Below, in pieces: positions 4,877 through 17,402 of a DNA stretch of 64,000 nt. The translations under genes and the position numbers were made by a program. The DNA lies in the IMG/VR virus record IMGVR_UViG_3300045256_000050, positions 1 to 64,000 of that record; one strand, 5' to 3'. Position 1 is the first letter of the stretch. The number at the start of each line of letters is the position of its first letter. Below the pieces are notes generated by a model that saw only the letters and a program-made list of their open reading frames with translations, was not told the origin of the DNA and searched no databases.

Positions 4877-4926
4877 TGACACCGGCTGTCGTGGTGTTAA
4901 GAAACAACCAACCGGGGTAGAGTAAC

Positions 4927-5559
4927 ATGCGTCAAGCGAAGGTGAACCTGTACTCGGTGAACGAACTGACGGGCAAGGCGAAGGACAAGGCAATCGAAGC
5001 CGGTCGGGAGTGGCATAACGCCACGTTCGATTCGGCCGAGATGACGGAACAACTGAAGGAGTACGCCCACGAGAAGCACGGCGTCAAGGCCGACGACGTG
5101 AACTGGTCGATTTCCTTCAGTCAAGGCGACGGTGTGGCGTTCTACGGCACCATCGACCTAGACGAACTGGCGAAGAAGCACGAGAACGTCAAGAAGCTGG
5201 TGGACGCCGCCGCCGAGATCGACGTGACCCTGAGCGTCACCAGTGAGGGGCGGAACAACCGCTATCACCACTGGAACAGCATGAGTGTGACGGCCGAGCA
5301 TGACACCGGCTATCGGTACAGTGAGAGGTTCGCCGACGACGACGAGACGCCGCTGATGGAGAAGGCGGACAAGCTCGCCACGGAGCTACAGGAAGCGGTC
5401 GCCGAGATTCTGAAGGCGGCAAGCCGTGACACCCATAGCTGGGGCGAGAAGTGCGTCCTGGCCGACAGTGAGGATTCGGCCATCGTGGAACTGCTGGAAG
5501 AGAACGAGTGGGAGTTCGACGTGAACGGGAAGCCGTTCGGCCACCCGGAAGCGGAGTAG
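4927..5559 (+). CDS. Conserved-looking acidic phage protein
   Basis: N-terminal 'LYSVNELTGKAKDKAIE' and C-terminal 'NEWEFDVNG' patterns resemble a widespread phage/plasmid hypothetical family. Confidence 0.85.
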   Translation: MRQAKVNLYSVNELTGKAKDKAIEAGREWHNATFDSAEMTEQLKEYAHEKHGVKADDVNWSISFSQGDGVAFYGTIDLDELAKKHENVKKLVDAAAEIDVTLSVTSEGRNNRYHHWNSMSVTAEHDTGYRYSERFADDDETPLMEKADKLATELQEAVAEILKAASRDTHSWGEKCVLADSEDSAIVELLEENEWEFDVNGKPFGHPEAE

Positions 5560-5739
5560 TGTACAAACAACCATCCCCCGGAGCGGCAATCTCCGGGGGA
5601 TGGTGCGGCAAGTGGCAGAACAGGCAGTCAACGGGGAGTTGACAACTACACTTTAACCGCCAAACGCCCCGTGTCAACTTTTCCCGGAATCTGACACCGG
5701 ATGTCGGGGAGCAACGACAACCCAAGAGAGGGTCAGACG

Positions 5740-6111
5740 ATGTTCTGGGGCAGCATTCAAGAGCGGGAGCAGTGGGAGTACGAAGCGGGCATGGCGAACG
5801 AGTGGCAGAACGCCTTCGCCGTGTCGCAGATGGAACGCAAGCCCGACGACCGGGCGGCGGCTGAGGAACTGGTTTCTCTCGGCCGTTACGTCGTGGTGCG
5901 TGAGGGGGTGGTTTTCTGCCCCCGGACCGACGCCAGCATGGGCACCGCCGTCTACATGCTGGGGGACTTCGAGACGCACGACGAAGCCCTGGAGATGGCA
6001 CGGGAAGAGGGCCGGGACGACGACGGGGATTCGTGGGTGCGGGTGATGACGCCGACGCCGGTAATCCTCAACCCGCCGACCCCGCTAAACCCGTCGGATA
6101 TCCCGTTCTGA
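5740..6111 (+). CDS. Hypothetical protein with an SSB-like DIPF C-terminus
   Basis: CCCAAGAGAGGG RBS module, ATG at 5740; stop is the repeat TGA. Confidence 0.8.
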   Translation: MFWGSIQEREQWEYEAGMANEWQNAFAVSQMERKPDDRAAAEELVSLGRYVVVREGVVFCPRTDASMGTAVYMLGDFETHDEALEMAREEGRDDDGDSWVRVMTPTPVILNPPTPLNPSDIPF

Positions 6112-6167
6112 CACCGACTGCAAGAGGGCGGGGCAACTTGCCCCGCCTAACCAACTCAAGGTGACTG

Positions 6168-6668
6168 ATGCACGCTTCCAAGCTGGCCGAACTGACTGCC
6201 GAAGTGAACGCCGTGAATCTGGCGAACGGGTACGCCAACGAGTTGTTGCCGCCGCTGCTGGAGTTCTTCACCCCGCTGGTCGGGCAGAAGATCGTCAAGG
6301 CGGACGGCTCGCTCTTGGCGAAGCTGGAGAGCAAGCTGCCGAAGTTCCCGGCGGTGACGGGTCGGCCGGGGCAACACCCGCACGCCACGGTGATGACCTA
6401 CCGGCACCGCAGCGACTACTCGCTCGCCTGGACGGTCAAGGTGTGTTGGCCGATCCCGCCGCACACCTGCACCTACTACGAGCGGACGCTGTACGTCGGG
6501 GACATGAGCGGCGACGTGCTGAAGGAGATGACGAAGCACCGGGAGCCGTGGAAAACGGACTACACGGTCGAGGCCGCTGTCGCCGCAATCGAGAAGTACG
6601 AAGCGGCGAAGAAGGCGGCGGACGACGCCCGTTCGGCGTGCTGGCCGTTCGAGAAGTTCATCCGGTAA
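6168..6668 (+). CDS. Hypothetical protein
   Basis: AAGGTG RBS after a repeat. Confidence 0.8.
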   Translation: MHASKLAELTAEVNAVNLANGYANELLPPLLEFFTPLVGQKIVKADGSLLAKLESKLPKFPAVTGRPGQHPHATVMTYRHRSDYSLAWTVKVCWPIPPHTCTYYERTLYVGDMSGDVLKEMTKHREPWKTDYTVEAAVAAIEKYEAAKKAADDARSACWPFEKFIR

Positions 6669-6783
6669 GGTGGTGGGAATTTGAGGCGGGGACTTAAACC
6701 CGCCTCTTTCCCAACGCAACATAACAAACATTATCGGACGTTGACACCGGCTGGAGCGGCGTAACCTTCACTGAGGACACGAG

Positions 6784-6972
6784 ATGAGCCTGCCAGTACG
6801 GGACGACGTGAAGACGGTTCAGTACCACCGTAACCCGACGCCGAGCGAAGTGCGGTTCGGCCACGGGGCCATTCACTACCGGGACTTCCCCAAAGAGGAA
6901 GTCATGAAGCCGGACGGCACGCTGAAAAAGTGGTTCGTGGCGAAGGACGACGGGCTGAGGTACTACCGCTGA
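6784..6972 (+). CDS. Hypothetical protein
   Basis: CACTGAGG RBS module; stop is the repeat TGA. Confidence 0.8.
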   Translation: MSLPVRDDVKTVQYHRNPTPSEVRFGHGAIHYRDFPKEEVMKPDGTLKKWFVAKDDGLRYYR

Positions 6973-7016
6973 CACCGGCTGTCGAGACGTAACCAACACC
7001 CAATAAAGGGACTGAC

Positions 7017-7325
7017 ATGAGCGTCCGCTACCGTCGCATCTCGAAGGCTGAGGCCCGCAAGCTGTTCAATCAGGGGAACCACCCGATCTTCCTCTGTCCG
7101 TGCAAGTTCCGCCCGGAGGGGCCGTTCAGCATGGCTGCGATGGTAGCGGGGCGTGAGTACCTGGAGAAAGCGAAGGGGTACGAGAAGCACAAGGATAGCC
7201 CGGTGTGGGCCGGGACTGTCGAGGCGACGGCGTGGAACCTGATGTACGACAACTGGAAGTTCTACAACGCCACCTACGAAACCGGCTACTACGCCCACTA
7301 CTACGTCCAAGAGGACGTTGGCTGA
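7017..7325 (+). CDS. Hypothetical protein
   Basis: Lies between repeats; stop is the repeat TGA. Confidence 0.8.
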   Translation: MSVRYRRISKAEARKLFNQGNHPIFLCPCKFRPEGPFSMAAMVAGREYLEKAKGYEKHKDSPVWAGTVEATAWNLMYDNWKFYNATYETGYYAHYYVQEDVG

Positions 7326-7371
7326 CACCGGCTGCAAGAGAGCGAACGACACACCCAACCTGGAGAGAGTG

Positions 7372-7650
7372 ATGGCGAAGGCGATCAAGGCGAGCGACAA
7401 GCCCCTGGTGCTGACGGCGGTGCGGGGCTACCGCAAGGAGTTGTTCCACAAGGCCCGCAGCGGGGTGTACACCTTCCGGGTGTACGGCAGCGGCAAGGAG
7501 TGGTTCATCGCCATCGACACGGGGTCGAAGGTGGTGCGGCTGACGAGCGGCAAGGTGTTCGGCAAGAAGTCCACGGCCATCGGGTTCGTGTTCGCCCGGT
7601 ACGGCCAGAAGGCCACCGAGTTCCGGGCGGCGGCGAAGCTGGCGGCGTGA
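7372..7650 (+). CDS. Basic hypothetical protein
   Basis: GGAG RBS, start moved to ATG 7372; followed by a GC hairpin at about 7657-7705. Confidence 0.75.
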   Translation: MAKAIKASDKPLVLTAVRGYRKELFHKARSGVYTFRVYGSGKEWFIAIDTGSKVVRLTSGKVFGKKSTAIGFVFARYGQKATEFRAAAKLAA

Positions 7651-7761
7651 TACAAGCCCGGCCCGCTACCCGGAGAAACATCGAGAGTCACGGTAGCGGG
7701 CCGGGTGAGTGACACCGGCTGAAGGGGTGTGAGTGAGACACACCCCTTCACTGAGGCCAGC

Positions 7762-8160
7762 ATGTTCCGCAAGTTCCAGACGCTAGTGCCGGACGGCAAG
7801 TATCTCAAGCACGTTTACGACGTGCCGAAGGAGGCCGGGTTCTACGTCCTGAAGTACAAGGAAGGGCACGAAGAACGGGTCTACCTGGACACGCCGAAGC
7901 ATCACCACAGCGAAGTCTACAGCTACCCGGCGACGTACTTCAACTACCGAGACAAGCCGGACTGCGGGATGGACATGGGCCAGTATGTGTGGGTGAACAG
8001 CTACACCACGCACGGCCCGGTCGAGTGGCGTCGGATGGAACCGAAGGAGGCGTTAGAGTTCTCCTGTGCCCTGTTCCGGTTCGGTCGTCCGTCGTGGGCA
8101 CATCCGCACGGCCGCAAACCGCTGACTCTGGCAGACGTGACACCGGCTGAAGTGGCGTAA
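7762..8160 (+). CDS. Hypothetical protein
   Basis: CACTGAGG RBS; ends in the repeat (VTPAEVA*). Confidence 0.8.
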   Translation: MFRKFQTLVPDGKYLKHVYDVPKEAGFYVLKYKEGHEERVYLDTPKHHHSEVYSYPATYFNYRDKPDCGMDMGQYVWVNSYTTHGPVEWRRMEPKEALEFSCALFRFGRPSWAHPHGRKPLTLADVTPAEVA

Positions 8161-8189
8161 CGAACACCAACCCAAGAGAGGGGACGACG

Positions 8190-8591
8190 ATGAGCCGGAG
8201 CTACAACGCTTTCAACCACAAGGCTTGGGCTGAGGCGGGGCTGAAGGACTACGGGGACTTCGCCGACATGGTGGAGTTCGTGAACCAGACGGAGTACGGC
8301 GACGGGCAGTTGGAAGGCGAGTGGTACTACTGCGACGACGAAACCCGGACGATCTACACCGGGACGTTCGGCAACTACAACTCGCCGGGGGCGGACAGCT
8401 ACACCAACGCCGACGTGTACGACGAGGACGAGATCGACGAGTACAACGCCGAAAAGGCGAAGCTCGAAGCTCAGGACGAGTACAGCGACGAGCAGCACGA
8501 AATCTGGGACGCCGAAGACGAAGAGGGTGAGGACGGCGACGAGGACGGTGACACCGGCAGTGAGTGGGCAGAGAGGCCGATGGGACCGTAA
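8190..8591 (+). CDS. Highly acidic protein (possible DNA mimic)
   Basis: Very D/E-rich with aromatic residues. Confidence 0.8.
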   Translation: MSRSYNAFNHKAWAEAGLKDYGDFADMVEFVNQTEYGDGQLEGEWYYCDDETRTIYTGTFGNYNSPGADSYTNADVYDEDEIDEYNAEKAKLEAQDEYSDEQHEIWDAEDEEGEDGDEDGDTGSEWAERPMGP

Positions 8592-8606
8592 CCAAGAGGG
8601 GCTACG

Positions 8607-8813
8607 ATGCGGGTGTTAGCGAAGACGTTCGGCTGGTTGCTCGTGAGCGGTGCGATCATCTTCACGAGCAACCTGTACAGCGGAGTGGAGTGGAGAACCG
8701 CCCTTTACGGGGCGGCGGTGGCGAAGATCGGGACGACCATCGCCTACTTCCTGTACGAAGTCGCCTTCGAGAAGGGTTGGAAGAAGAAGGTGACACCGAC
8801 TGTCGAGACGTAA
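8607..8813 (+). CDS. Small membrane protein (DUF2061-like)
   Basis: R-x-L-A-K-T-x-x-W start, two hydrophobic segments, Y-F-L-Y-E end. Confidence 0.7.
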   Translation: MRVLAKTFGWLLVSGAIIFTSNLYSGVEWRTALYGAAVAKIGTTIAYFLYEVAFEKGWKKKVTPTVET

Positions 8814-8837
8814 CGACAACCCAAGAGAGGGAAGACG

Positions 8838-9269
8838 ATGGGCAAGATGGTGCTGAAGGCCGGGACCAAGCGGGCCATCCACGTCTACACGAAGGTGCTG
8901 GTGGAGCGGATGAAGGAGGACAAGGGCCAGATGCTCTGGCTCGTCCGCTCCTCGCTCCACGACTACAAGAAGGCGATCATCTGTCGCCGGGTGGAGTGGA
9001 ACGGGCCGTGCAGCGGTGAGGACTTGTTCGGCAAGGCGTTGCCGGGCACGGGTGGGCGGGGCGTGGCGATCCTGTTCACTGAGGCCGAGTTGACCCTGCA
9101 CTTCGACGGGGACAAGGCCGAGATCATCGACATGGACGACGACGCCAAGCCCGCCGAGAAGAAGCCCGAACCGCCGCCGGTGGTGGTGAAGGTGGAGAAG
9201 CCCGATCCCCGCCCGGTTCGGCCGGGGGTGCGGATCATCAACCGGCGGACGCTTCAGCCGGTTGGTTAA
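8838..9269 (+). CDS. Hypothetical protein
   Basis: CCCAAGAGAGGG RBS module. Confidence 0.8.
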   Translation: MGKMVLKAGTKRAIHVYTKVLVERMKEDKGQMLWLVRSSLHDYKKAIICRRVEWNGPCSGEDLFGKALPGTGGRGVAILFTEAELTLHFDGDKAEIIDMDDDAKPAEKKPEPPPVVVKVEKPDPRPVRPGVRIINRRTLQPVG

Positions 9270-9388
9270 CAGCAAACTGAGGGGAGCGGGGGCCGTCCCC
9301 CGCTCTCTGACACCGACTGTCGTGGTGTGGTGGTGAGTCGAGTACCGGGGCGAATGAAAGCCCCAAACCCAACCTGAGAGGGATTCGC

Positions 9389-9730
9389 ATGAGCAGCAAC
9401 GCCGTGGCCGGGAAGTACGTCAACGTCCGCATCGAGGGGGCGACCGACGCCGACGTGTTCGCCGCCGCCGACCAGATGGGGGTGTGGACCCCGCCGAACG
9501 TCAAGGTGTACGACAAGCGGGACAACACCGGGGTGTTCATCTACGGCCGGAAGTACCTCGCCCAGACGGCGACGGTGCCCGCCCCGGCCCCGCAGCGGGT
9601 GCAGCCCCGGACGGTGAGCCGCCAGCGGCCCCCGGTCGTCCACGCCCCGACGGGCCGGGGCTACATCGACGACGCCGACGAGCGGGAGTGGGAGAACGCC
9701 ACGGGGCGGGACGGCCGACCGGCCTTCTGA
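9389..9730 (+). CDS. Hypothetical protein
   Basis: Stop is the repeat TGA. Confidence 0.75.
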   Translation: MSSNAVAGKYVNVRIEGATDADVFAAADQMGVWTPPNVKVYDKRDNTGVFIYGRKYLAQTATVPAPAPQRVQPRTVSRQRPPVVHAPTGRGYIDDADEREWENATGRDGRPAF

Positions 9731-9791
9731 CACCAACTGGTGAGGGGCGGGGAGATGATCCCCGCCCCTTCTTCTTTCACTGAGGACACAC

Positions 9792-10103
9792 ATGCGTCGG
9801 ATGCTGCTGGTTGGTGCGGTGCTGGGGCTGGCGAGCATGGGCCGGGCGGATGACAAGATCGTGGTGAAGGACAACAAGGGCACGACGATCATCATCAACG
9901 GGCCGGTGATCGTGAGCGGCAACAACAACATCGTGCAAATCGGCTCGGGCAACAAGGTGATCGTGAACAGCCCCGGAGCGGTGCAGAAGGGCACGAAGAA
10001 TGCCCCGTCCCGTGCTGGCTCCGTGTCAAAGCCGTGTGACGAGCAGGCCCAACGGCACGAGCAGCAGGTCGCCGCCTGGATGGCGATGATGGGCAAGCGG
10101 TGA
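9792..10103 (+). CDS. Secreted protein with short G-N-N-x-V/I beta repeats
   Basis: Signal-peptide-like N-terminus (MRRMLLVGAVLGLASMGRA); stop is the repeat TGA. Confidence 0.8.
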   Translation: MRRMLLVGAVLGLASMGRADDKIVVKDNKGTTIIINGPVIVSGNNNIVQIGSGNKVIVNSPGAVQKGTKNAPSRAGSVSKPCDEQAQRHEQQVAAWMAMMGKR

Positions 10104-10146
10104 CACCCCCTGACGAGGCGTCCTAGAACCCCCGGAGATCGAGAGC

Positions 10147-10416
10147 GTGGCAGGCAAGACGAAGACCAACAAGGTTCATTACATCCCGTCGTCGGAAGTG
10201 TTCGACGGCCGTCCGTTCGCCAAGCAGGCGTTGGAGGACAGCGGGCTGTACACCTACGGCGAGAATGACATCTCGCTGGTGAGCCGTGACAAGCTTATCG
10301 AAGGACTCGAAGGGCTGGACATCGAGGACGACGACGTGCAAGAAGAGGTAGACGGGGCTGTCGAGTACCTGCAAGGACTGCCCGCAACGATCTACATCGA
10401 CCTTGAGGACATGTGA
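10147..10416 (+). CDS. Acidic hypothetical protein
   Basis: GTG start; stop is the repeat TGA. Confidence 0.75.
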   Translation: MAGKTKTNKVHYIPSSEVFDGRPFAKQALEDSGLYTYGENDISLVSRDKLIEGLEGLDIEDDDVQEEVDGAVEYLQGLPATIYIDLEDM

Positions 10417-10473
10417 CACCGGCTGTCGAAGCGTAACGAAGACCACAACACACTACCCAAGAGAGGGGCGACG

Positions 10474-10770
10474 ATGAACAAGATGCCGAAGATCAGCAGC
10501 TACGGCCCGTACAGCGGCAACTACGGGACGCACTGCATGCAGGTGGAGATCGGGAGCGTCACGCTGTACTTCAGCTACCAGACGCTCATCGCCTTCAGCA
10601 CCCCGGAGGGCCGGGTGGTGAGCAAGAACTGCTGGGGGCCGACGACCGGGAAGCACCTGAACAGCATCGACGGGGGCGACAAGAAGTCCCGGCTGGACCG
10701 GGACGAGTTCGAGGCCAAGTGGAAGGAAGTCGCCGAGCGGTTCAACGTCGAACCCGCCCTGACCATCTGA
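10474..10770 (+). CDS. Hypothetical phage protein
   Basis: 'FSYQTLIAF...TTGKHLN' motif typical of a widespread phage ORFan family; stop is the repeat TGA. Confidence 0.85.
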   Translation: MNKMPKISSYGPYSGNYGTHCMQVEIGSVTLYFSYQTLIAFSTPEGRVVSKNCWGPTTGKHLNSIDGGDKKSRLDRDEFEAKWKEVAERFNVEPALTI

Positions 10771-10822
10771 CACCATCTGTAACCGGGGCGGGGAATCACC
10801 CCCGCCCCTCAACCCTGGAGAG

Positions 10823-11026
10823 ATGAACGTGTTCCCGGCTGTCACCGAAGCGACTCACAAGGAACTGGCCCAACTACGCTACGCCCAGAAGGTAGCGGGG
10901 GCGTGGCTCGCAAACGAAGTCGCCGATACCGACCACTACGGGCGGCGTAAGTCGGTGGTGGAGATGAGCAAGGCCGACAAGCGGGCGAAGAAGCTACAGA
11001 AGAAGCTCGCCCGACGGGCAGCCTGA
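10823..11026 (+). CDS. Hypothetical protein
   Basis: GGAG RBS; stop is the repeat TGA. Confidence 0.75.
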   Translation: MNVFPAVTEATHKELAQLRYAQKVAGAWLANEVADTDHYGRRKSVVEMSKADKRAKKLQKKLARRAA

Positions 11027-11080
11027 CACCGACCGCTAGGGGGCGAGGACGACTCGCCCCCTTCACTCACTGAGGCGACG

Positions 11081-11332
11081 ATGGAAAGCCACTACGAGAT
11101 CAACGTCAGCAAGTGCGAGAACCCCGGCACGAAGATCGGGACGCCCCGCTACAAACACTTCTTCGCCACGGCCCCCCGCAGCATCAAGAGCAAGCACGAG
11201 TTGCGGGTGTTGCTCGACGAGTTCAAGGCGAAGTTCCCGGAACCCGAGTACCTGATTACGGCGACGTACAACGAGTGCATCGGGTACAGCGTGGACACGA
11301 GCGACGAGCGGCTGACGGTGGACAAGTCCTGA
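11081..11332 (+). CDS. Hypothetical protein
   Basis: CACTGAGG RBS; stop is the repeat TGA. Confidence 0.8.
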   Translation: MESHYEINVSKCENPGTKIGTPRYKHFFATAPRSIKSKHELRVLLDEFKAKFPEPEYLITATYNECIGYSVDTSDERLTVDKS

Positions 11333-11365
11333 CACCGGCTGTCGGGGCACCAACGAGGACAACCG

Positions 11366-11728
11366 ATGAGCTTCCTGACCAAGCGGGCCGACAGCTACGC
11401 CAAAGTCGCCGAGAACTACCGGCGGCTCGAAGGGGTGTGCATCAAGTTCGGGCTGGTGCCCAAGAGCGGCGACCTGTTCACTGAGGAAAGCTGGCCGATC
11501 CCCGTCCATGAGGACGACCGGCCGCTGGAATACTGGCCGAGTGAACGGGTGGGCAGCGTGCTGTTGACGAAGCCGGGCACGTTCCCGGAACACGTCGCAG
11601 CGGTGCGGGTGAACGCTGACGGCTACTACGGCCACGTCATCGGGGCGGGTGGCAATCACGACCTGTACGCAAGCGACCTGGAGCATCTGCTGCAACGGGC
11701 CGGGCTGACACCGGCTGCCGGGGTGTAA
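11366..11728 (+). CDS. Hypothetical protein
   Basis: GAGGA RBS; ends in the repeat (LTPAAGV*). Confidence 0.8.
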   Translation: MSFLTKRADSYAKVAENYRRLEGVCIKFGLVPKSGDLFTEESWPIPVHEDDRPLEYWPSERVGSVLLTKPGTFPEHVAAVRVNADGYYGHVIGAGGNHDLYASDLEHLLQRAGLTPAAGV

Positions 11729-11744
11729 CCAAGAGGACAACGAG

Positions 11745-12041
11745 ATGCCAGTGATCGTGAAGTACGACAACGGGTTCGACACGAAGCTGCTCAAGGCTGA
11801 CAAGCTCGAAGCTCTGGTCAGCCAGCACGGTTCGCCGACGTTCGACACGGCACGCAACCTGTGGGTGTTCGCCGACGGCACCACCTACCTGTTCAAGAAC
11901 CCGTTCCCCGGCGACCGGCGGACCGTGACCGGGTTCTCGGTGGTGCCCTGGACGGACGGCGACCGTGACCTGCGAGAGAAGCTGAGCCGCCCCGACCCGA
12001 TCCGGCGGTGCTGCTGGTGCCGCTGCTACCACTACAACTGA
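11745..12041 (+). CDS. Hypothetical protein with a Cys-rich C-terminus
   Basis: GAGGA RBS; stop is the repeat TGA. Confidence 0.75.
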   Translation: MPVIVKYDNGFDTKLLKADKLEALVSQHGSPTFDTARNLWVFADGTTYLFKNPFPGDRRTVTGFSVVPWTDGDRDLREKLSRPDPIRRCCWCRCYHYN

Positions 12042-12066
12042 CACCGGCTGCTGAGGCGTGGAGGAC

Positions 12067-12250
12067 AGCATGGTAAACGCAAGAGACGGGCCGGGTTGAG
12101 TGACGGTCGTCATTCAACAATACTCTGTGTGGGAGACTGAGCATGACCCGTGCAAGGCCACCGCCGGTATAACTCAACCTGTCGCATACCGGATTCGCAC
12201 CGAAGGCAACCTGCGAGCCACGAACCCACCGGAAAGGAGCGTGTACCATG
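12067..12250 (+). ncRNA. Candidate structured ncRNA occupying a cassette slot
   Basis: Closing helix CATGGTAAACGC (about 12068-12079)/GCGTGTACCATG (12239-12250); inner helix GGGTTGAGT/ACTCAACCT; alternative CCGGTAT/ATACCGG; no good ORF. Confidence 0.5.
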
Positions 12251-12359
12251 AAGCGGTCGTAACCCTTACCTCATGATGATCGGCCGGGGCGGGGAGGAGA
12301 CTAACCCGCCCCCTTCTGACACCGACTGTCGAAGCGTAACAACACCAGAGGACGGGACG

Positions 12360-12557
12360 ATGGACACGAGCAAGCTGAGCGGCTGGCAGCGTCAGGTTCG
12401 GCAGAACATCCGCAACGCCTTCCTCACCGCCACCCGTGCGGAGTTGGAGAAGGCGTTGAGCAACTACCCCGATGACTTCAGTAAGGAGTGCATCCGGGAG
12501 ATCATCGCCGAGTGCGATGCGGCCGGGGTGGACAATGCCGGTAAGCGGCCTGCCTGA
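12360..12557 (+). CDS. Hypothetical protein
   Basis: GAGGA RBS, ATG at 12360; stop is the repeat TGA. Confidence 0.75.
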   Translation: MDTSKLSGWQRQVRQNIRNAFLTATRAELEKALSNYPDDFSKECIREIIAECDAAGVDNAGKRPA

Positions 12558-12604
12558 CACCGGCTGTCGGGGTGTGAGACGGACAACCCAAGAGAGGGAA
12601 GACG

Positions 12605-13141
12605 ATGCAGATTGTCAACGGCAAGCTCGTGCTGGGCAAGAAGAACTGCAACTGCGGCGACGGCACCGTGTCCACCCGAGTGACCTGCAAGTCGTGCAAC
12701 GGCAGCGGGCGGGGCAAGCGGGGCGGGGCGAGGGGGTGCAAACCGTGCTACGGCAACGGCACCACCTACGACCACGACAAGCGGAGCGTGTGCCCGCAGT
12801 GCAACGGCAACTTCAAGGATCACGACGACGAAGATACCTGCGACTACCTTCCCGCCGGGGTGTTCGCCGGGTTCACCTTCCGGGTCTACTACGGCGGGCA
12901 GATGACCATCGGTGAGGCGTTGATGGGGCTGGGCTGTGTGTTCTCGTGTGGCGACTACGGGGCCGCATGGAAGGAACGCAACGACGAGAAGTTGATCGCC
13001 GACGTGCGACAGCACAGCGGGGTGCAAGCCACGAAGGTTGTCGATAAGGACAACAACGTGGCCGACCACATCGGGATTTTCGTGACGCCGAGCGGGTACA
13101 CGGTGAAGCCGGTGTTCGTGACACCGGCTGTCGGGGTGTGA
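12605..13141 (+). CDS. DnaJ-type zinc-finger (CxxCxGxG repeats) protein
   Basis: CNCGDG, CKSCNGSG, CKPCYGNG, CPQCNG motifs; ends in the repeat (VTPAVGV*). Confidence 0.85.
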   Translation: MQIVNGKLVLGKKNCNCGDGTVSTRVTCKSCNGSGRGKRGGARGCKPCYGNGTTYDHDKRSVCPQCNGNFKDHDDEDTCDYLPAGVFAGFTFRVYYGGQMTIGEALMGLGCVFSCGDYGAAWKERNDEKLIADVRQHSGVQATKVVDKDNNVADHIGIFVTPSGYTVKPVFVTPAVGV

Positions 13142-13200
13142 TAGGGACGGACAACGGGGGCGAGCAACACCGCTCGCCCCTCACCTTCACTGAGGCGACG

Positions 13201-13446
13201 ATGACCCCGACGAAGCACAACATCATCATCGACGGCGACGTTTCGGCGAGCGACCTGATCGACTCGTGGAACAACGGGAACAAGAGCTACGTTCTGGACA
13301 AGTTGGAGAACGACCACGCCGGGCTGACGGCTCTGGTTCTCGTGAGCGGGGCGACCGACAAGCGGCTGAGTCTCGCCGCCTGCAACGAGATCACCAACAA
13401 GCTGATCGACCGGCGGCGGGAGATGATGCTTCGGGCCGAGCGGTGA
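13201..13446 (+). CDS. Hypothetical protein
   Basis: CACTGAGG RBS, ATG at 13201; stop is the repeat TGA. Confidence 0.8.
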   Translation: MTPTKHNIIIDGDVSASDLIDSWNNGNKSYVLDKLENDHAGLTALVLVSGATDKRLSLAACNEITNKLIDRRREMMLRAER

Positions 13447-13482
13447 CACCGGCTGTCGTCGTGTAACCAAGAGGACACGACG

Positions 13483-13758
13483 ATGGTCAAGCTCAACGCT
13501 CGCACCCGGATGTTGGTCAACGACGCTCTGCACGACATGTGCAAGCGTCGTCACCGCTCGATCCCCCTGTCCGACATCACTTCGCTGCTCGCCACCCACG
13601 GGCTGAAGATTGAGGAATGTATCCTCACCGGCCGGGTCGGCAACGCACAGATTGACGTGCTGACCACCGACGGGCAGGACGTGAATAGCTGGCTGGTGCT
13701 GTCGTGGATGAAGGGCGACATCGACCACCAGTGGGAAGTGAACGCCTACCTGTCCTGA
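13483..13758 (+). CDS. Hypothetical protein
   Basis: GAGGA RBS; stop is the repeat TGA. Confidence 0.8.
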   Translation: MVKLNARTRMLVNDALHDMCKRRHRSIPLSDITSLLATHGLKIEECILTGRVGNAQIDVLTTDGQDVNSWLVLSWMKGDIDHQWEVNAYLS

Positions 13759-13814
13759 CACCGGCTGCTAGGGGGCGAGGAAGACACTCGCCCCCTTCAC
13801 TGAGGACAACGCTC

Positions 13815-14039
13815 ATGACGATTCAGGCTCCCGCCCCGTTCCACGACGGCACGTTCGTCCTGCACAAGATCGAACTCAACGGGCACAAGTATTCCGCATG
13901 GTTCGGCAAGGACGGGGTTGTGTTCTCGGCCGAGCGGTTCAGCCGGGACAATCAGAAGACGTTCAACGTCCCGCTCAACCGTCAGAAGAACGTGGCCGAG
14001 CAGTTGACCAAGATCGGCAAGCGGTACACGGGCCGCTGA
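13815..14039 (+). CDS. Hypothetical protein
   Basis: CACTGAGG RBS, ATG at 13815; stop is the repeat TGA. Confidence 0.8.
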   Translation: MTIQAPAPFHDGTFVLHKIELNGHKYSAWFGKDGVVFSAERFSRDNQKTFNVPLNRQKNVAEQLTKIGKRYTGR

Positions 14040-14084
14040 CACCGGCTGTCGAAGTGTAAGAAACCCACACACTGAGGACGAACG

Positions 14085-14312
14085 ATGTACGCTCTGCTCG
14101 CCGAGTTCCGCCGGGGCAACAAGTACAACATCACCCTCAAGACGGGCAACGACGTGGCGAAGCTGGCCGACCTGGGGTGGATCGTGTTCGACGACCCGGC
14201 GGTGCTGGTCGCCGAGATGGAGAGCGGCAAGAAGATGCTCAACATGAAGTACGAGAAACGGGAGCAGATCATCGCCTACCTCCGGGCGATGACACCGGCT
14301 GTGGCGGTGTAA
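14085..14312 (+). CDS. Hypothetical protein
   Basis: CACTGAGG RBS; ends in the repeat (MTPAVAV*). Confidence 0.8.
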   Translation: MYALLAEFRRGNKYNITLKTGNDVAKLADLGWIVFDDPAVLVAEMESGKKMLNMKYEKREQIIAYLRAMTPAVAV

Positions 14313-14335
14313 GGCAACCCAAGAGAGGGACGACG

Positions 14336-14605
14336 ATGGCCTACCGCCTGACGCTGACGAAGGGTGAGCGGGATGCGATTGACTGGATCGGTCATCGCTA
14401 CCGCCACGGCGACGAGTTCTATCGCCTGCTGATGGAATGCACGGCGACCCCGGACGACGCCGATTGGGACGACGAGCGGGATATCGAGTACACGATCCCC
14501 GAACACGTCGCCTGGACGATGGGCGAGATCATCGACGAAGGGCTGGACTGCTTCGCCGACGAACTGTGCAGCAAGCTCCGGGCCTTCCGCAACCGCATCG
14601 TGTGA
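14336..14605 (+). CDS. Acidic hypothetical protein
   Basis: CCCAAGAGAGGG RBS, ATG at 14336; stop is the repeat TGA. Confidence 0.8.
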   Translation: MAYRLTLTKGERDAIDWIGHRYRHGDEFYRLLMECTATPDDADWDDERDIEYTIPEHVAWTMGEIIDEGLDCFADELCSKLRAFRNRIV

Positions 14606-14662
14606 CACCGGCTGCTAGGGGGCGAGGACAACCCTCGCCCCTCACCTTCACCGAGAGAAGAC

Positions 14663-14920
14663 ATGAACCGCACCCCGAGCATCCTGTCCGGCCTCCGCAC
14701 CGCCACCGTCGCCCCGGTCGCCCCGGTCAACGTGAGCCACAAGCGGGTTGACCTGTTCAACAGCATGTGCAACGGCACCGAGATCACGATCATGTCCCGG
14801 CCCGACGGCAAGTACCACACGGGCATCGTGACCAGCATCGCCCGTGAGGACGGCAGCGGGTACAAGTTCCTGGTCCGCCTGCACAACAGCCCGACGATCC
14901 ACTACGTCGTGATGATGTGA
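14663..14920 (+). CDS. Hypothetical protein
   Basis: Stop is the repeat TGA. Confidence 0.8.
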   Translation: MNRTPSILSGLRTATVAPVAPVNVSHKRVDLFNSMCNGTEITIMSRPDGKYHTGIVTSIAREDGSGYKFLVRLHNSPTIHYVVMM

Positions 14921-14966
14921 CACCGGCTGACGGGGCGTAACGATCACCCGCACTGAGGACACGACG

Positions 14967-15161
14967 ATGGCGAAGAAGATGCACACGACGGCCCCCATCA
15001 AGGACAAGGGGGCCGAGTTGTTCGCTCCGATCAAGCTCAGCGTTGGGCTGGGCCGGGTCGGGCACCAGCAGCACACCGGCGGCACCGGGTTCCACAACAG
15101 CCGGAAGCGGGCTGGCAACCGCTCGCAGCAGACCCGCAAGGCGGTCGCCGAGTACGCCTGA
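14967..15161 (+). CDS. Small basic protein
   Basis: CACTGAGG RBS; stop is the repeat TGA. Confidence 0.8.
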   Translation: MAKKMHTTAPIKDKGAELFAPIKLSVGLGRVGHQQHTGGTGFHNSRKRAGNRSQQTRKAVAEYA

Positions 15162-15197
15162 CACCGCCTGTGGTGGTGTAAGAAACCCAAGAGAGGG

Positions 15198-15452
15198 ATG
15201 CAGATGAGTCGTGAACGCTCGCTGGTTCGTGCGATCCGTGAAGTCAAGGTGCGGAAGCACCACCGTGACCTTGCCAAGCTGATCGCCGACCAGATGGACC
15301 CCGAGAACGTCGGGATCGACGGCCGACCGATCTACCGCAACGTCCACGTCGCTCGCCGCCACCTGCTGATCGACTGGCAGAAGTCGTTCCGCAAGCGTCG
15401 GTGCCGACGGTGTGCCCGGCGAGTCGCCAAGTGCGAACTCCGGGCTGCGTGA
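15198..15452 (+). CDS. Arg-rich small protein
   Basis: CCCAAGAGAGGG RBS; stop is the repeat TGA. Confidence 0.75.
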   Translation: MQMSRERSLVRAIREVKVRKHHRDLAKLIADQMDPENVGIDGRPIYRNVHVARRHLLIDWQKSFRKRRCRRCARRVAKCELRAA

Positions 15453-15528
15453 CACCGGCTGTAGGGGTGTGAGAGGGGCGGGCGAGTGACCCGCCCCTGA
15501 CCTGCGACCTTCACTGAGGACACGACAC

Positions 15529-15942
15529 ATGGCGACCCGGCTCTACCCGCACACGAAGAACACCGTCATCATCGAGAAGCTGCTGGGCGTGCCCGAAGGC
15601 ACGGCCCTCCGGCACGCCGCCCTCAACGAGCCGTTCAAGCAGGCGAAGGCCAAGCTCAACGAGGGGTTCGCCGACCTGACGCTGGAGCAGCAGGCCGAGC
15701 GGCGGCGGGAGTACATGCGACTGGACGAGGCCGAGTGGGACGCCAACAACTCCAGCGAGGAGATCGCCAAGTACGACGGGTTCTTAACCTTCGGGTGGGG
15801 CCGGGTGGTGCATCGGCACTGCTCCGAGCCGAGCGGCTACACCAACGACCCGGTGCTGGTCGCCCAAATCCTCCGGGCACAGGGGGTGACGCTCCCGCCC
15901 GACGTGAAGATCGAAGACCTGGAAGGGCTGGGGTGGTGCTGA
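15529..15942 (+). CDS. Hypothetical protein
   Basis: CACTGAGG RBS; stop is the repeat TGA. Confidence 0.8.
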   Translation: MATRLYPHTKNTVIIEKLLGVPEGTALRHAALNEPFKQAKAKLNEGFADLTLEQQAERRREYMRLDEAEWDANNSSEEIAKYDGFLTFGWGRVVHRHCSEPSGYTNDPVLVAQILRAQGVTLPPDVKIEDLEGLGWC

Positions 15943-16009
15943 CACCGGCTGTAGGGGTGTGAGAGGGGCGGACGAGTGAGCCGCCCCCACACCCAAGAGA
16001 GGGAACACG

Positions 16010-16342
16010 ATGGCGACCCGCAACCGCTGGAACAAGTGGAACATCCGGGCCAAGCTGAAGACCGACTTCAAGTGGTGCCGCCGGGCACTGATCGTGCTGT
16101 ACCAGCGGCAGACCGCTGACGAGCAGTCGGCCACCCGGACCAAGCACGACAACGACCGGGGCTTCAACCAGCCCGACGCCCGGCGGGGCAGCGAACTCGC
16201 CCGCAAGGCCATGACGCCGGTGCTGTTCGAGCCGTGGGAAGTGATCGAGGCCCGCAAGCTCCTGATGAAGTACGCCGGGCAACTCGCCCGGATCGCCAAC
16301 GAGAAGGAGCGGGCGGCGAAGGCCCGGCCGGTGACGGTGTGA
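16010..16342 (+). CDS. Conserved phage hypothetical protein
   Basis: 'RALIVLYQRQTADEQ...N.RGF..PDA...KYAGQL' motif seen in many phage proteins; stop is the repeat TGA. Confidence 0.85.
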   Translation: MATRNRWNKWNIRAKLKTDFKWCRRALIVLYQRQTADEQSATRTKHDNDRGFNQPDARRGSELARKAMTPVLFEPWEVIEARKLLMKYAGQLARIANEKERAAKARPVTV

Positions 16343-16424
16343 CACCGGCTGAGGGGGTGTGAGAGAGACGGACAACGGGGCGGGTGAGTGACCCGCCCCT
16401 CACCTTCACTGAGGACAGACGACG

Positions 16425-16619
16425 ATGCCGACCTTCGGACTCAAGCACAACATCGGCAGCAACACGACCACCGCCGGGAAGTTCGACAGCAGCGGCCTGA
16501 CCTACCTCGGCATGCTGAGCGGTGAGAAGGAGATCAAGTGGACGACGATGACCCTGGCGGCGGGCATCTACCACATGTACACGAACGGCAGCGAGATGTA
16601 CCTGTTCCCGGAGCAGTGA
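16425..16619 (+). CDS. Hypothetical protein
   Basis: CACTGAGG RBS; stop is the repeat TGA. Confidence 0.8.
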   Translation: MPTFGLKHNIGSNTTTAGKFDSSGLTYLGMLSGEKEIKWTTMTLAAGIYHMYTNGSEMYLFPEQ

Positions 16620-16687
16620 CACCGGCTGAGGGGGTGTGAGAGAGGGGCGGGCGAGTGACCCGCCCCCTTCACTAAGGAGCATCGCAC

Positions 16688-16870
16688 ATGTCGAAGTACA
16701 ACGTCCGCCGCCTGAACCACCTGCTCGCCAAGCACACCGCCTTCCGCTCGCTCGCCGACCTGCTCACGAGCGTGGCCGGTGGCTACACCCCGACGATCAT
16801 CTGCCGCACCTGCCAGCACGGCGAACTCGTCCGCCTGCTCCGGGACAACGGGGTGGCTGTCCGGGTCTGA
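16688..16870 (+). CDS. Hypothetical protein
   Basis: AAGGAG RBS; stop is the repeat TGA. Confidence 0.75.
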   Translation: MSKYNVRRLNHLLAKHTAFRSLADLLTSVAGGYTPTIICRTCQHGELVRLLRDNGVAVRV

Positions 16871-16916
16871 CACCGGCTGAGGGGGTGTAACGAGGACACA
16901 ACGGAGGACGCAAGAC

Positions 16917-17402
16917 ATGGCGACGAAGACCAAGACGGCCACGGTCCCGACGACGACGGTGCTGGACGAGACGAAGGCCGGTCGCAAGCGGGCGACGAAG
17001 GCCAAGCCGGTGACGGGTCACACCGGCAAGCAGAAGATGGCCCTGGTGCTGGGCGGGGCCGCAACGTTCGTCCTGGCCCTGAGCGTCTGGGAAGTGACGA
17101 CGGCCCTGACGACGCTCACGAAGATGCCCCTGGTGATCGCCGCACTGATGGCGGTGGGGATCGACGTGGTGATGGTGCTGTGCGAGATGGCGGTGATCGC
17201 CGCCCCCGACACGGACGCCGCCCGGTGGGGTAAGCGGTACGTCGGAACGACGGTCGGCCTCAGCATGTTACTCAACGGGCTGGCCGCTACGCAGCACGCC
17301 GAGGGGATGTGGTGGCTGCTCGCTGCCCCGGTCGGTGCGATCATGCCGGTGCTGGTCTACATGGCCTTCCGGGTGGCGGGCAGCCTGTACGTTAACAAGT
17401 GA
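16917..17402 (+). CDS. Four-TM membrane protein (DUF2637/SpdA-like)
   Basis: Four hydrophobic helices, 'GID' and 'LSMLLNG' motifs; last gene of the array. Confidence 0.8.
   Translation: MATKTKTATVPTTTVLDETKAGRKRATKAKPVTGHTGKQKMALVLGGAATFVLALSVWEVTTALTTLTKMPLVIAALMAVGIDVVMVLCEMAVIAAPDTDAARWGKRYVGTTVGLSMLLNGLAATQHAEGMWWLLAAPVGAIMPVLVYMAFRVAGSLYVNK

What the first reader, a model, noticed from the sequence alone, without database searches (positions are those of the whole stretch)
5692..16680. Interchangeable leader modules (hairpin plus RBS) follow the repeat and evolve locally
Seen: after the 23-mer comes one of a few stock leaders. (a) CCCAAGAGAGGG then ATG, at 5721, 8171, 8821, 10456, 12587, 14318, 15186 and 15992. 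(b) An optional GC hairpin (GGGGCG...CGCCCC) plus CACTGAGG, at about 6769, 7749, 9778, 11068, 13188, 13798, 14070, 14951, 15512 and 16406. (c) GCGTAACAACCGCCTAACCAA at about 1274 and 1747. Nearby copies are often the most alike: 15450/15940/16340/16617 form one group and 11024/13756/14603 another. Inference: the mobile or duplicated unit is repeat plus translation signal, homogenised by local recombination, so a newly inserted ORF gets ready-made expression signals.
Basis: partly seen in the sequence, partly recalled or inferred. Interest (0 to 1): 0.65.

Follow-up and report, generated by a model that had tools for sequence, protein, structure and literature searches.

The report
Gene-punctuating repeat units in huge phage
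A 17-kb block of about 45 small unrelated genes in a huge T4-like phage is punctuated after almost every gene by one invariant 12-base box followed by stock hairpin and ribosome-binding leaders. This resembles the promoter/stem-loop cassettes known to shuffle genes in T4-type phages, but the signal is different and unusually strict.

Summary
The window is the first 64 kb of a 245-kb virus record, a T4-like huge phage that probably infects Gemmataceae (Planctomycetota). From 165 to 17402, about 45 small + strand ORFs with no paralogy are separated by one unit. The unit starts with a 12-mer box, TGACACCGRCTG (35 exact copies, none elsewhere in the 245 kb). A weaker second half, GGYGTRA, is an imperfect inverted copy of the box start. 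Then come an optional GC stem-loop without a U-tract and one of a few Shine-Dalgarno leaders placed 5-10 nt before ATG.

The box supplies the stop codon. 28 ORFs end at its TGA and 8 end at a second stop at positions 21-23. The other 9 have their own earlier stop, separated from the next box by a hairpin, an RNA gene or another ORF.

Similarity is confined to the stretch from TGA to ATG. The hairpin and the CACTGAGG leader are linked, not free modules.

The same units occur in a related phage and in a small island of a Limnoglobus genome. The best reading is PeSL-like regulatory and recombination cassettes. What reads the box (DNA or RNA level) is unresolved, and it is not a canonical sigma-70 promoter.

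The parts
165..17402 (+). Unidirectional array of about 45 small ORFs (25-239 aa) separated by repeat units. It runs to the left end of the contig region, so its true 5' boundary is unknown.
   Evidence: ORF and repeat tables. No paralogues. Almost no Pfam hits and 8 PHROGs of unknown function.
303..17422 (+). 47 intergenic or terminal copies of the box TGACACC(GRCTG). Starts: 303, 485, 889, 1257, 1730, 2020, 2389, 2484, 3088, 3834, 4293, 4638, 4877, 5692, 6109, 6742, 6970, 7323, 7710, 8138, 8549, 8791, 9308, 9728, 10101, 10414, 10768, 11024, 11330, 11706, 12039, 12317, 12555, 13119, 13444, 13756, 14037, 14290, 14603, 14918, 15159, 15450, 15940, 16340, 16617, 16868, 17400. Four further copies lie wholly inside ORFs (1851, 3400, 5301, 5427).
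   Evidence: position weights: 1-7 invariant, 8-12 near invariant, then G15, G17, G18, G20, T21, A23.
8791..8840 (+). Typical hairpin-less unit with leader (a): box, second half CGTAAC, spacer, CCCAAGAGAGGG, 6 nt, ATG. The upstream ORF 8607-8813 ends at the second stop (positions 21-23).
13756..13817 (+). Typical hairpin unit with leader (b): box (its TGA is the stop of ORF 13483-13758), a 10-bp GC stem-loop directly after the 12-mer, TTCACTGAGGAC, then ATG.
   Evidence: One search gives -26.5 kcal/mol with z = -3.8.
15450..16690 (+). The locally similar group: units at 15450, 15940, 16340 and 16617, 88-96% alike over about 48 nt. It includes one hairpin combined with an (a) leader (15940).
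303..324 (+). Compact unit in which the SD (GGAG) overlaps the end of the box and the ATG sits at unit positions 20-22. A twin lies at 2389-2410.
1257..1779 (+). They belong to the CA-rich, weak-SD leader style of the first 4 kb.
17400..17455 (+). Terminal degenerate copy of the unit at the stop of the last ORF. No gene follows, only the one canonical intrinsic terminator of the region (stem 17422-17448 plus a T-run).
508..888 (+). Non-coding 'cassette' flanked by boxes 485 and 889. It contains a tRNA-like element (acceptor-like arms at 705 and 768, T-arm GGTTCGATCC at 754).
   Evidence: Not called by ARAGORN or Rfam.
12042..12316 (+). Non-coding 'cassette' flanked by boxes 12039 and 12317. 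It has two mini-ORFs with SD (12070, 12248) and a terminal GC hairpin. Its 3' part is 76% conserved in contig L005.
   Evidence: No Rfam hit. Fold z = -0.18.
2818..2890 (+). tRNA-Glu (UUC) embedded in the array.
20047..20074 (-). Isolated copy of the 23-mer on the - strand, 5 nt after the stop of a - strand gene. Here a T precedes the box, and it reads as TTGACA, 16 nt, TAAGAT. It faces the bidirectional terminator at about 19950.

Best explanation
The array is the 'ORFanage' (hyperplastic, probably early) region of a T4-like huge phage. Its genes are separated by one modular expression cassette.

Shown by sequence:
- Each unit ends translation of the upstream ORF. It carries stops in two frames: TGA at positions 1-3 and TAA/TGA at 21-23.
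- Each unit restarts translation with one of a few Shine-Dalgarno leaders fixed 5-10 nt before ATG.
- About a third of units carry a stable GC stem-loop that lacks a U-tract.

Inferred:
- The invariant 12-mer, with its degenerate inverted half, is the recognition site of one sequence-specific factor. That factor acts once per gene on transcription, as a reiterated phage-specific promoter/activator site or an operator. This is the role sigma-70 promoters play in T4-type PeSLs and repressor sites play as stoperators.
- The stem-loops act as attenuators and RNA-end stabilisers, not full terminators.
- The 40-85-nt units are portable homology. Recombination between them moves or replaces ORFs and locally homogenises neighbouring units, so any ORF placed between two units is expressed.
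For: Phage identity:
- T4-like portal, baseplate and tail genes.
- Terminase.
- A sigma-like ORF with region 2 only.

The box:
- 35 exact 12-mers, all in one orientation, all within 17 kb and none elsewhere in 245 kb.
- Information content profile.

Relation to ORFs:
- 36 of 45 ORFs end inside the unit. Frame A holds 28 of 45 against an expected third (p = 7e-5).
- The ORFs are unrelated ORFans.
- Self-similarity is limited to the stretch from TGA to ATG.

Structure and termination:
- Leaders with hairpins fold with z = -3 to -5.5.
- The stems differ by changes on both arms (GCGGG/CCCGC, GCGAG/CTCGC, GTGTG/CACAC).
- There is only one U-tract terminator, at the array end.

Conservation:
- Between strains, changes fall on the positions that also vary between copies.
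- The same box, second half and CTTCACTGAGGA leader sit 41-48 nt before ATGs in a Limnoglobus island, even where 100-350 nt of non-coding DNA lies upstream. This ties the unit to downstream gene expression.
- The box is not enriched in 151 Gemmataceae genomes, so it is not a general host signal.

Precedent:
- PeSLs run from stop codon through promoter and GC stem-loop to SD and ATG, and they mediate shuffling (PMC2839356, PMC4122927).

Local patterns:
- Array-wide gradients and local similarity.
Against: - No canonical sigma-70 promoter is predicted at any unit. Any -10-like TAAC lies only 15 nt from the TGACA and lacks the final T. Units whose hairpin starts right after the 12-mer lack even that.
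- Host-type promoters in the same genome and next to the island look canonical.
- In two compact units (303, 2389) the SD overlaps the box, so there the box must lie inside the mRNA.
- The copy at 17400 has no downstream gene.
- The strong preference for the box's TGA as the actual stop is not required by a DNA-level site.
- No candidate reader was found. There is no phage RNA polymerase, MotA, RegB or integrase in the 245 kb, though about half the genome is missing.
- No transcript data could be obtained.
- No direct evidence of cassette gain or loss between strains was found.
Confidence: 0.5

Rival explanations
1. RNA-level punctuation. The array is one long transcript. The box is read on the RNA by a phage or host endoribonuclease or RNA-binding protein that cuts or marks the message just after each stop codon. 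The GC stem-loops protect the new ends. Non-coding RNAs flanked by two boxes are released in the same way.
For: - The box is anchored to the upstream stop codon (36 of 45 ORFs), not at a fixed distance from the next ATG (7 to 90 nt).
- It is present after the last gene before the terminator (17400).
- Two boxes flank each non-coding segment (485/889, 4638/4877, 12039/12317).
- In compact units the box is necessarily transcribed.
- The hairpins lack U-tracts.
- The base of the (b) hairpins pairs CUG of the box with CA(C/G) before UGAGG. The Limnoglobus unit shows a compensatory C to G there.
Against: - The box has no structure of its own, and its left half never varies, so there is no covariation.
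- Eight ORFs translate through it and would lose their stop if it were cut before position 23.
- In the island, several units are not next to an ORF end.
- No RegB-like or other candidate nuclease was found.
- No Rfam family matches.
Confidence: 0.25
2. The box is mainly a DNA recombination site. It would be an integron-attC-like or REP-like mobile unit, inserted or exchanged by a dedicated recombinase or a Y1 (IS200/IS605-type) transposase. Expression signals would be secondary.
For: - The layout is n cassettes with n+1 repeats and a degenerate terminal copy, and non-coding segments are also flanked by boxes.
- ORFs never have their own stop within 35 nt upstream of a box, as if junctions form exactly at its left edge.
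- Five of the six box copies that an ORF reads through (1851, 3400, 5301, 5427, 8549) are in the one frame without a stop.
- One of them (3400) is a box plus (b) leader plus ATG patch, at a place where a 35%-identical homologue has a different, 4-aa longer stretch.
- A Y1 transposase is encoded at 202440-202808.
Against: - No tyrosine integrase is found in 245 kb.
- Hairpin-less units have no attC-like paired core sites.
- The Y1 gene looks like an ordinary IS200-type tnpA with a TnpB-like ORF nearby. It has no box copies around it, and its flanking hairpin is unrelated.
- Strict conservation of the SD leaders and their spacing to ATG points to selection on expression.
Confidence: 0.1
3. A stoperator-like silencing system. 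A repressor binds the box after every gene and blocks elongating RNA polymerase. This keeps a toxic host-takeover block silent in lysogeny or late in infection.
For: - The site is asymmetric and strongly conserved, in one orientation relative to transcription, in short intergenic spaces overlapping stop codons. This matches what is described for Cluster A mycobacteriophages (PMC9283540).
- The 23-mer is an imperfect palindrome (TGACACC ... GGYGTRA; perfect in one island copy).
- Longer palindromes with TTGACA/TGTCAA arms lie at 4706-4757 and 5637-5679.
Against: - The sites are confined to 17 kb rather than spread over the genome.
- No integrase or recognisable repressor was found.
- A T4-like phage is expected to be lytic.
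- The density of one site per gene exceeds any known stoperator set.
Confidence: 0.1
4. Neutral concerted evolution, or an assembly artefact. The repeats would be non-functional relics of serial duplication.
For: Neighbouring units can be nearly identical (15450 vs 15940: 46 of 48), and variant states follow a gradient.
Against: - The same 14.6 kb is 100% identical in an independent assembly from another sample.
- The ORFs between units are unrelated, so this is not tandem gene duplication.
- The invariant positions stay invariant in a 92%-identical strain and in a distant island.
- Stops in two frames and fixed SD spacing indicate selection.
Confidence: 0.03

Closest known systems
PeSL (promoter-early stem-loop) regulatory cassettes of T4-type phages (Arbiol et al. 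2010, PMC2839356; Comeau et al. 2014, PMC4122927)
   Same: - The host is a T4-like phage, and the units lie in a region of small ORFans.
- The unit runs from the upstream stop codon, through a conserved box and a GC-rich stem-loop at variable positions, to SD and ATG.
- Units flank unrelated ORFs and offer about 50-100 bp of homology for shuffling.
   Different: - The conserved box is not a sigma-70 -35/-10 promoter and has no AT-rich upstream part.
- It begins with the stop codon itself and provides stops in two frames.
- It follows almost every gene (47 copies in 17 kb) and is far more strictly conserved (12 of 12 in 35 copies).
- Promoter activity, terminator activity and mini-circles are untested here.
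Start-associated sequences (SAS) and extended SAS of Cluster K mycobacteriophages (Pope et al. 2011, PMC3203893)
   Same: - A short conserved SD-containing box lies at a fixed short distance from start codons of non-structural genes, in one orientation.
- About half the copies have imperfect inverted repeats just upstream. The left arm is better conserved than the right.
- The function is unknown.
   Different: - The consensus and the host are different.
- SAS occur 11-19 times per genome, on a subset of genes.
- There is no stop-codon-anchored box.
- Here at least three SD leader types share one upstream box.
Stoperators of Cluster A mycobacteriophages (PMC9283540, PMC6550527)
   Same: Asymmetric 13-14-bp sites, many per genome, in one orientation relative to transcription, in short intergenic spaces.
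   Different: - Stoperators are spread over the whole genome of temperate phages and are bound by a known immunity repressor.
- Here the sites are confined to one block, and no repressor or integrase was found.
Halovirus HF2 intergenic repeats (PMC8707807)
   Same: Classes of conserved intergenic repeats (29 and 58 bp) precede genes and are conserved in position among related viruses. They were shown to carry promoters.
   Different: HF2 is an archaeal virus, its repeats hold AT-rich promoter motifs, there are far fewer copies, and they are not tied to stop codons.
Integron gene cassettes (attC) and REP/BIME elements with RAYT transposases (from general knowledge, not tested against a database here)
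   Same: Arrays of promoterless unrelated ORFs are each followed by a repeat. REPs are GC-rich palindromes just after stop codons that stabilise or attenuate mRNA.
   Different: - There is no integrase, no attC-type paired core sites, and no palindrome in most units.
- The Y1 transposase in the genome is not associated with the boxes.

Membership tests
PeSL cassettes of T4-type phages | Located between small non-essential ORFs in a hyperplastic region of a T4-like phage genome | tested here: met
   T4-like portal, baseplate and tail genes. 45 small ORFan genes in one block.
PeSL cassettes of T4-type phages | Contains a sigma-70 consensus early promoter (-35, -10, AT-rich upstream region) | tested here: not met
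   No sigma-70-type site at any unit (2 sites against 2.5 expected, neither at a unit). The base before TGACA is C/G in 48 of 51 copies. There is no AT-rich stretch.
PeSL cassettes of T4-type phages | GC-rich stem-loop at variable position within the unit | tested here: met
   12 units have a 7-11-bp GC stem after the box. In 7 intergenic regions the stem lies before the box. z = -3 to -5.5.
PeSL cassettes of T4-type phages | Unit spans from upstream stop codon to SD and start codon of the next gene | tested here: met
PeSL cassettes of T4-type phages | Mediates recombination (indels between close relatives at the units, mini-circles) | tested here: inconclusive
   L005 carries the same units around ORFs absent from the 245 kb. 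It may come from an unsampled part of the array. The only syntenic relative piece (L006) shows no indel of a cassette. Mini-circles cannot be tested with these tools.
Stoperators (Cluster A mycobacteriophages) | Many asymmetric sites in one orientation relative to transcription, in short intergenic spaces | tested here: met
Stoperators (Cluster A mycobacteriophages) | Distributed over both arms of the genome and bound by the phage immunity repressor of a temperate phage | tested here: not met
   Confined to 303-17400, with one isolated copy at 20073. No integrase. Binding is not testable.
SAS/ESAS (Cluster K mycobacteriophages) | 13-bp consensus GGGATAGGAGCCC 3-8 bp upstream of start codons | tested here: not met
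   The consensus differs. Only the principle is shared: conserved SD boxes CCCAAGAGAGGG and CACTGAGG lie 5-10 nt from ATG.
Integron cassette array | IntI tyrosine recombinase and attC sites with paired inverse core sites forming a folded bottom strand | tested here: not met
   PF00589 is absent from the 245 kb (half of the genome is missing). Hairpin-less units of 36-60 nt have no inverted core sites.
REP/BIME with RAYT | Palindromic units flanking or associated with a Y1 transposase that mobilises them | tested here: inconclusive
   A Y1 transposase is present (E = 5e-37). It is 185 kb away, IS200-like, and has no box near it. Most units are not palindromes.
Intrinsic (rho-independent) terminators | GC stem-loop followed directly by a U-tract | tested here: not met
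   Only 17422-17455 qualifies, with a borderline case at 9742-9770. The other unit hairpins are followed by CTTCAC or similar.

The most novel reading that the evidence does not exclude
The box is a private gene-punctuation signal read by a dedicated, still unidentified phage factor. That factor starts, stops or cuts transcripts once per gene. The small island in the Limnoglobus genome, next to a tRNA gene and carrying the same box and leader in front of its own genes, would be a satellite-like or defence element that listens to this phage signal and switches on when such a phage infects.
Probability: 0.12. Interest if true: 0.8.

Novelty: new variant of a known kind. Interest (0 to 1): 0.6.

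Why it matters
Phage ORFan blocks hold most of the unknown host-takeover and anti-defence genes, and how they are expressed and exchanged is poorly understood outside T4 and a few actinophages. This array shows that the regulatory-cassette principle also exists in a huge T4-like phage of a little-studied host group, probably Planctomycetota. Here the signal is not a sigma-70 promoter, it doubles as the stop codon in two frames, and it is unusually regular.

- The box gives a clean handle for finding the factor that reads it.
- It defines gene boundaries in similar metagenomic phages.
- It offers portable expression parts for planctomycete genetics.
- The shared units in a host-genome island open a testable link between a phage's expression code and a chromosomal element.

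Tried and rejected
Transcript evidence and RNA families:
- Rfam found only tRNA-Glu in 1-18000.
- The non-coding segment 12051-12316 does not fold better than shuffles.

Searches for a reader or recombinase:
- None of the following was found in the 245 kb: T7-like RNA polymerase, RNAP beta, tyrosine integrase, RegB, MotA.
- The controls for three of these families rang nowhere, and half of the genome is missing, so absence is weak.

Searches for further arrays:
- IMG/VR holds only the same phage from another sample.
- A looser box-plus-leader pattern gave only single chance hits.
- The metagenome scan gave two short contigs of a relative and one chance hit.
- 151 Gemmataceae genomes show background frequency only.
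- A 34-35% homologue of ORF 3137-3856 in another phage (L009) sits in a genome without any such units.

Readings considered and rejected:
- Sigma-54, ECF-type and T7-type promoters: spacing and key bases do not fit (reasoned from the consensus sequences, not from a tool).
- A stop-codon readthrough or SECIS role: the frames are inconsistent.
- An RNA hairpin ACACC/GGYGU within the 23-mer: the left arm is invariant and 45% of copies have an A.C mismatch.
- Depletion of TGACACC outside the array: 7 observed against 10-40 expected, but rank 44 of 420 same-composition words, so it is not compelling.

Host assignment:
- MetRS is only 45-50% identical to Gemmataceae MetRS. The host assignment therefore rests mainly on the island.

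Full report
**What the window is.** The window is the first 64 kb of a single 244,986-bp IMG/VR virus record. The record is linear and CheckV rates it 48% complete.
- It encodes a terminase, a T4-type portal (Gp20) interrupted by an intein, a gp5-like baseplate spike and a P2-I/gp6-like baseplate protein.
- It also encodes a sigma-like protein with region 2 only, MetRS, a CCA-adding/poly(A) polymerase-like enzyme and a histidine kinase.
- It is therefore a huge T4-like myovirus.
- An 80-kb contig from another sample is 100% identical over window 2928-17549, so the array is not an assembly artefact.

**Checking the observation.**
- CCCAAGAGAGGG occurs 8 times, only on the + strand and only in the array. 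It ends 6-7 nt before the start codon.
- CACTGAGG occurs 13 times on the + strand. Ten copies are leaders 5-10 nt before ATG and three lie inside ORFs.
- The 21-mer of class (c) occurs at 1274 and 1747.
- The underlying repeat is far beyond chance. There are 58 matches to TGACACCGRCTG with up to 2 mismatches against 15.3 +/- 4.2 in shuffles, and 49 of them are on the + strand between 303 and 16868.
- The exact 12-mer occurs 35 times in the array and nowhere else in the 245 kb on either strand.

**Anatomy of the unit.** Aligned on TGACACC, positions 1-7 are invariant in 51 copies and 8-12 are nearly so (G, R, C, T, G).
- After 2-4 free positions comes a weaker block: G15, G17, G18, Y19, G20, T21, R22, A23.
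- This second half is an imperfect inverted copy of the first (TGACACC against GGYGTRA). One copy in a relative is a perfect palindrome.
- The unit then continues in one of three ways: straight into a spacer, into a GC stem-loop of 7-11 bp that starts either at about position 16 or after position 26-38, or, in two compact units (303, 2389), straight into SD and ATG.
- Finally comes an SD leader. The types are CCCAAGAGAGGG (8 copies), (C)TTCACTGAGGAC (10 copies plus one CACTAAGGAG), AACCAAGAGG(A/G) (3 copies), several GGAG/GAGAG forms, and CA-rich weak-SD leaders in the first 4 kb.

**Relation to the genes.** I curated 45 + strand ORFs of 25-239 aa between 165 and 17402.
- 28 end at the TGA that opens the box.
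- 8 read through the box in the next frame and end at the TAA/TGA at positions 21-23. This gives them a common tail of the type TPAVGV.
- 9 have their own earlier stop.
- Frame A is over-used (28 of 45 against one third, p = 7e-5; 28:8 against frame B, p = 6e-4).
- No ORF has its own stop within 35 nt upstream of a box.
- Seven intergenic regions carry a GC hairpin before the next box: after the own stops at 1211, 4601, 5559, 6668, 7650 and 9269, and at the end of the non-coding cassette at about 12285-12310. The other three own-stop ORFs (2808, 4381, 8591) are followed by a tRNA gene or directly by the next ORF.
- Non-coding stretches (508-888, 4650-4876, 12042-12316) are flanked by a box on each side.
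- The last ORF still ends in a recognisable but degenerate unit (17400). It is followed only by the single canonical terminator of the region (17422-17455).

**What is repeated is the spacer, not the genes.**
- All-against-all BLASTP of 44 ORFs gives no hit at E <= 0.01.
- Pfam gives three marginal hits and PHROGs eight families of unknown function.
- Self-BLASTN of the array gives 47 HSPs. Nearly all start at the box (within about 10 nt) and stop at the ATG (+3). A few run 9-30 nt into the 5' ends of ORFs (13118-13224 vs 16339-16454; 14918-14993 vs 16868-16940).

**Local similarity.**
The nearest-neighbour test is marginal (p = 0.02) and driven by 15450/15940/16340/16617. The group 11024/13756/14603 is real but interleaved with other types.
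- Over the whole array the signal is significant though modest (r = -0.15, p = 0.003; nearest neighbour p = 0.001).
- Variant states of the repeat itself form gradients. Position 19 is C in the first two thirds and T in the last third (p = 3.5e-4). Position 9 is A early and G late (p = 1.4e-3).
- Hairpin and leader type are associated, not independent. 8 of 11 (b) leaders carry the hairpin against 1 of 8 (a) leaders (p = 0.02). This fits the fact that the CA of TTCAC pairs with the TG that ends the box at the base of the stem.

**Structure, promoters, terminators.**
- Hairpin units fold at -24 to -34 kcal/mol, with z = -3 to -5.5 for the shorter ones. Hairpin-less units do not differ from shuffles.
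- Stems differ between units by changes on both arms, so pairing is what is kept.
- None but the final one has a U-tract.
- No unit scores as a sigma-70 promoter. The base before TGACA is C or G in 48 of 51 copies. The best -10-like element (TAAC) is 15 nt away and lacks the final T.
- Canonical promoters do exist in this genome and beside the island. Examples are TTGACA-17-TATCTT at 29247(-), the isolated box copy at 20073(-) that reads TTGACA-16-TAAGAT, and TTGACC-16-TAAATC before the island's tRNA.

**Relatives.**
- A metagenome scan found two short contigs from one ENA assembly. L006 is 92% identical and syntenic to 13648-14537. Its differences in the three units fall on the positions that also vary among copies, and the invariant positions are unchanged.
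- L005 has three units with the same box, second half, hairpin and (a)/(b) leaders around ORFs that have no match in the 245 kb. It also has a 76% copy of the 3' part of the non-coding segment 12233-12360. It may come from a part of the array not covered by our contig, so it shows more units but not necessarily shuffling.
- A genome scan found a roughly 4.3-kb island next to a tRNA gene in a Limnoglobus sp. MAG (Gemmataceae). It has about ten TGACACC copies.
- Four of them are full units (box, GYGTAAC or GTCAAC, hairpin or not, CTTCA(C/G)TGAGGA or GGAG) placed 41-48 nt before ATGs. Some follow 100-350 nt of non-coding DNA.
- One ORF there ends at the box TGA, followed by a hairpin.
- The island shares only a D12-class adenine methylase (44% identity) with the phage.
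- The box is at background frequency elsewhere in that 6.3-Mb genome and in 151 Gemmataceae genomes.
- No other IMG/VR contig has an array.
- The host is therefore probably a member of Gemmataceae. MetRS identity of 45-50% is compatible but not decisive.

**Interpretation: what is shown.** The units end translation in two frames and restart it with standard SD leaders. Their core positions are under purifying selection across strains and in a distant element.

**Interpretation: what is inferred.** The closest model is the PeSL of T4-type phages. That is a cassette from stop codon through early promoter and GC stem-loop to SD and ATG. It flanks ORFans and mediates their shuffling (PMC2839356, PMC4122927).
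- The phage is T4-like, the block is an ORFanage, and the layout matches, so I take this as the best frame.
- The difference is the conserved box. It is not a sigma-70 promoter, it is much more strictly conserved, and it starts with the stop codon.
- I favour a DNA-level reading by a dedicated factor, as a reiterated promoter/activator site or an operator.
- One reason is that the island units are tied to downstream genes rather than to upstream stops.
- The 23-mer is also an imperfect palindrome, and an isolated copy with a T in front forms a good sigma-70 promoter.
- This is only a moderate preference. The stop-codon anchoring, the compact units whose SD overlaps the box, the terminal copy without a downstream gene, and the pairs of boxes around non-coding segments fit an RNA-level processing or 3'-end signal at least as well.
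- A pure recombination-site reading is kept alive by four observations: the n+1 layout, the sharp left junctions, the box copies read through by ORFs mostly in the stop-free frame, and a box-plus-leader patch inside a conserved protein.
- Against it, there is no integrase, and the one Y1 transposase in the genome is not associated with the boxes.

**Limits.** No transcript or read data could be obtained. Half of the genome is missing, including the upstream end of the array. Only about 2 kb of a close relative was available. All functional statements beyond translation stop and start are therefore inference.

Noticed in passing
window 705-775 (within non-coding 508-888): tRNA-like element: 8-bp acceptor-like pairing (CATCGCAG / CTGCGATG), a canonical T-arm (GGTTCGATCC) and an anticodon-like stem with only a 5-nt loop. 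ARAGORN and Rfam do not call it.
   Followed up: partly
window 12070-12262 and L005 (reverse strand) about 60-220: Two mini-ORFs with SD, MVNARDGP(G)* and MKRS*, are conserved between the window and a related contig inside an otherwise diverged non-coding segment that ends in a GC hairpin. This may be a leader-peptide or regulatory element. The fold is not better than shuffles.
   Followed up: partly
window 4706-4757 and 5637-5679: Two long intergenic regions each hold an inverted repeat with TTGACA/TGTCAA arms (GTAACTTGACA ... TGTCAAGTTAC; AGTTGACA ... TGTCAACT). They are candidate operators or divergent promoters that may head the transcription units of the array.
   Followed up: no
window 20047-20074 (- strand) to about 19950: An isolated copy of the 23-mer that forms a good sigma-70-type promoter (TTGACA-16-TAAGAT) and points at a bidirectional terminator about 85 nt away. 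It may produce a small RNA.
   Followed up: no
window 3400-3423, inside ORF 3137-3856: Box start plus TTCACTGAGG plus an in-frame ATG lie inside a protein. Its 35%-identical homologue in another phage (L009) has a different, 4-aa longer stretch exactly there. This may be a gene-conversion patch from a unit.
   Followed up: partly
window 2818-2890: tRNA-Glu (UUC) sits inside the ORFan array without flanking boxes.
   Followed up: yes
G000:C1:118489-121065 (L022): The T4-like portal gene carries an intein (Intein_splicing domain between residues 156 and 333).
   Followed up: no
G000:C1:202440-202808 (-) and about 203959 onward (+) (L039): An IS200/IS605-type Y1 transposase (E = 5e-37) and, about 1 kb away, the start of a TnpB-like ORF. 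The contig's right end also looks TnpB-like. No array boxes lie nearby.
   Followed up: partly
L004:1357-2280 (-) = G000:C1 about 151027-151950: A sigma-like ORF of 307 aa with only region 2 detectable, at its C-terminal end. This recalls T4 gp55-type late sigma factors.
   Followed up: partly
L013 (Limnoglobus MAG JBGSJI010000149.1), island about 49.1-52.9 kb of the contig: The island lies next to a tRNA gene. It holds a 453-aa fusion of two HTH-like repeats with a D12 adenine methylase, and three box-like TGACACC copies lie in frame within it, two of them near the joins between these parts. The last unit precedes an ORF that matches only the C-terminal part of the alpha/beta hydrolase fold.
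   Followed up: partly
window 1-4000 versus 4000-17400: The first 4 kb of the array has negative GC skew (-0.11 to -0.13), CA-rich leaders with weak SD and CGTAAC-type second halves. The rest has positive skew and GAGG leaders. This suggests two sub-blocks of different history.
   Followed up: partly
window 31937-33070, 46492-48141, 60106-61776: Auxiliary genes of cellular type: a histidine kinase with an ethylene-receptor-like N-terminal domain, methionyl-tRNA synthetase, and a CCA-adding/poly(A) polymerase family enzyme.
   Followed up: no
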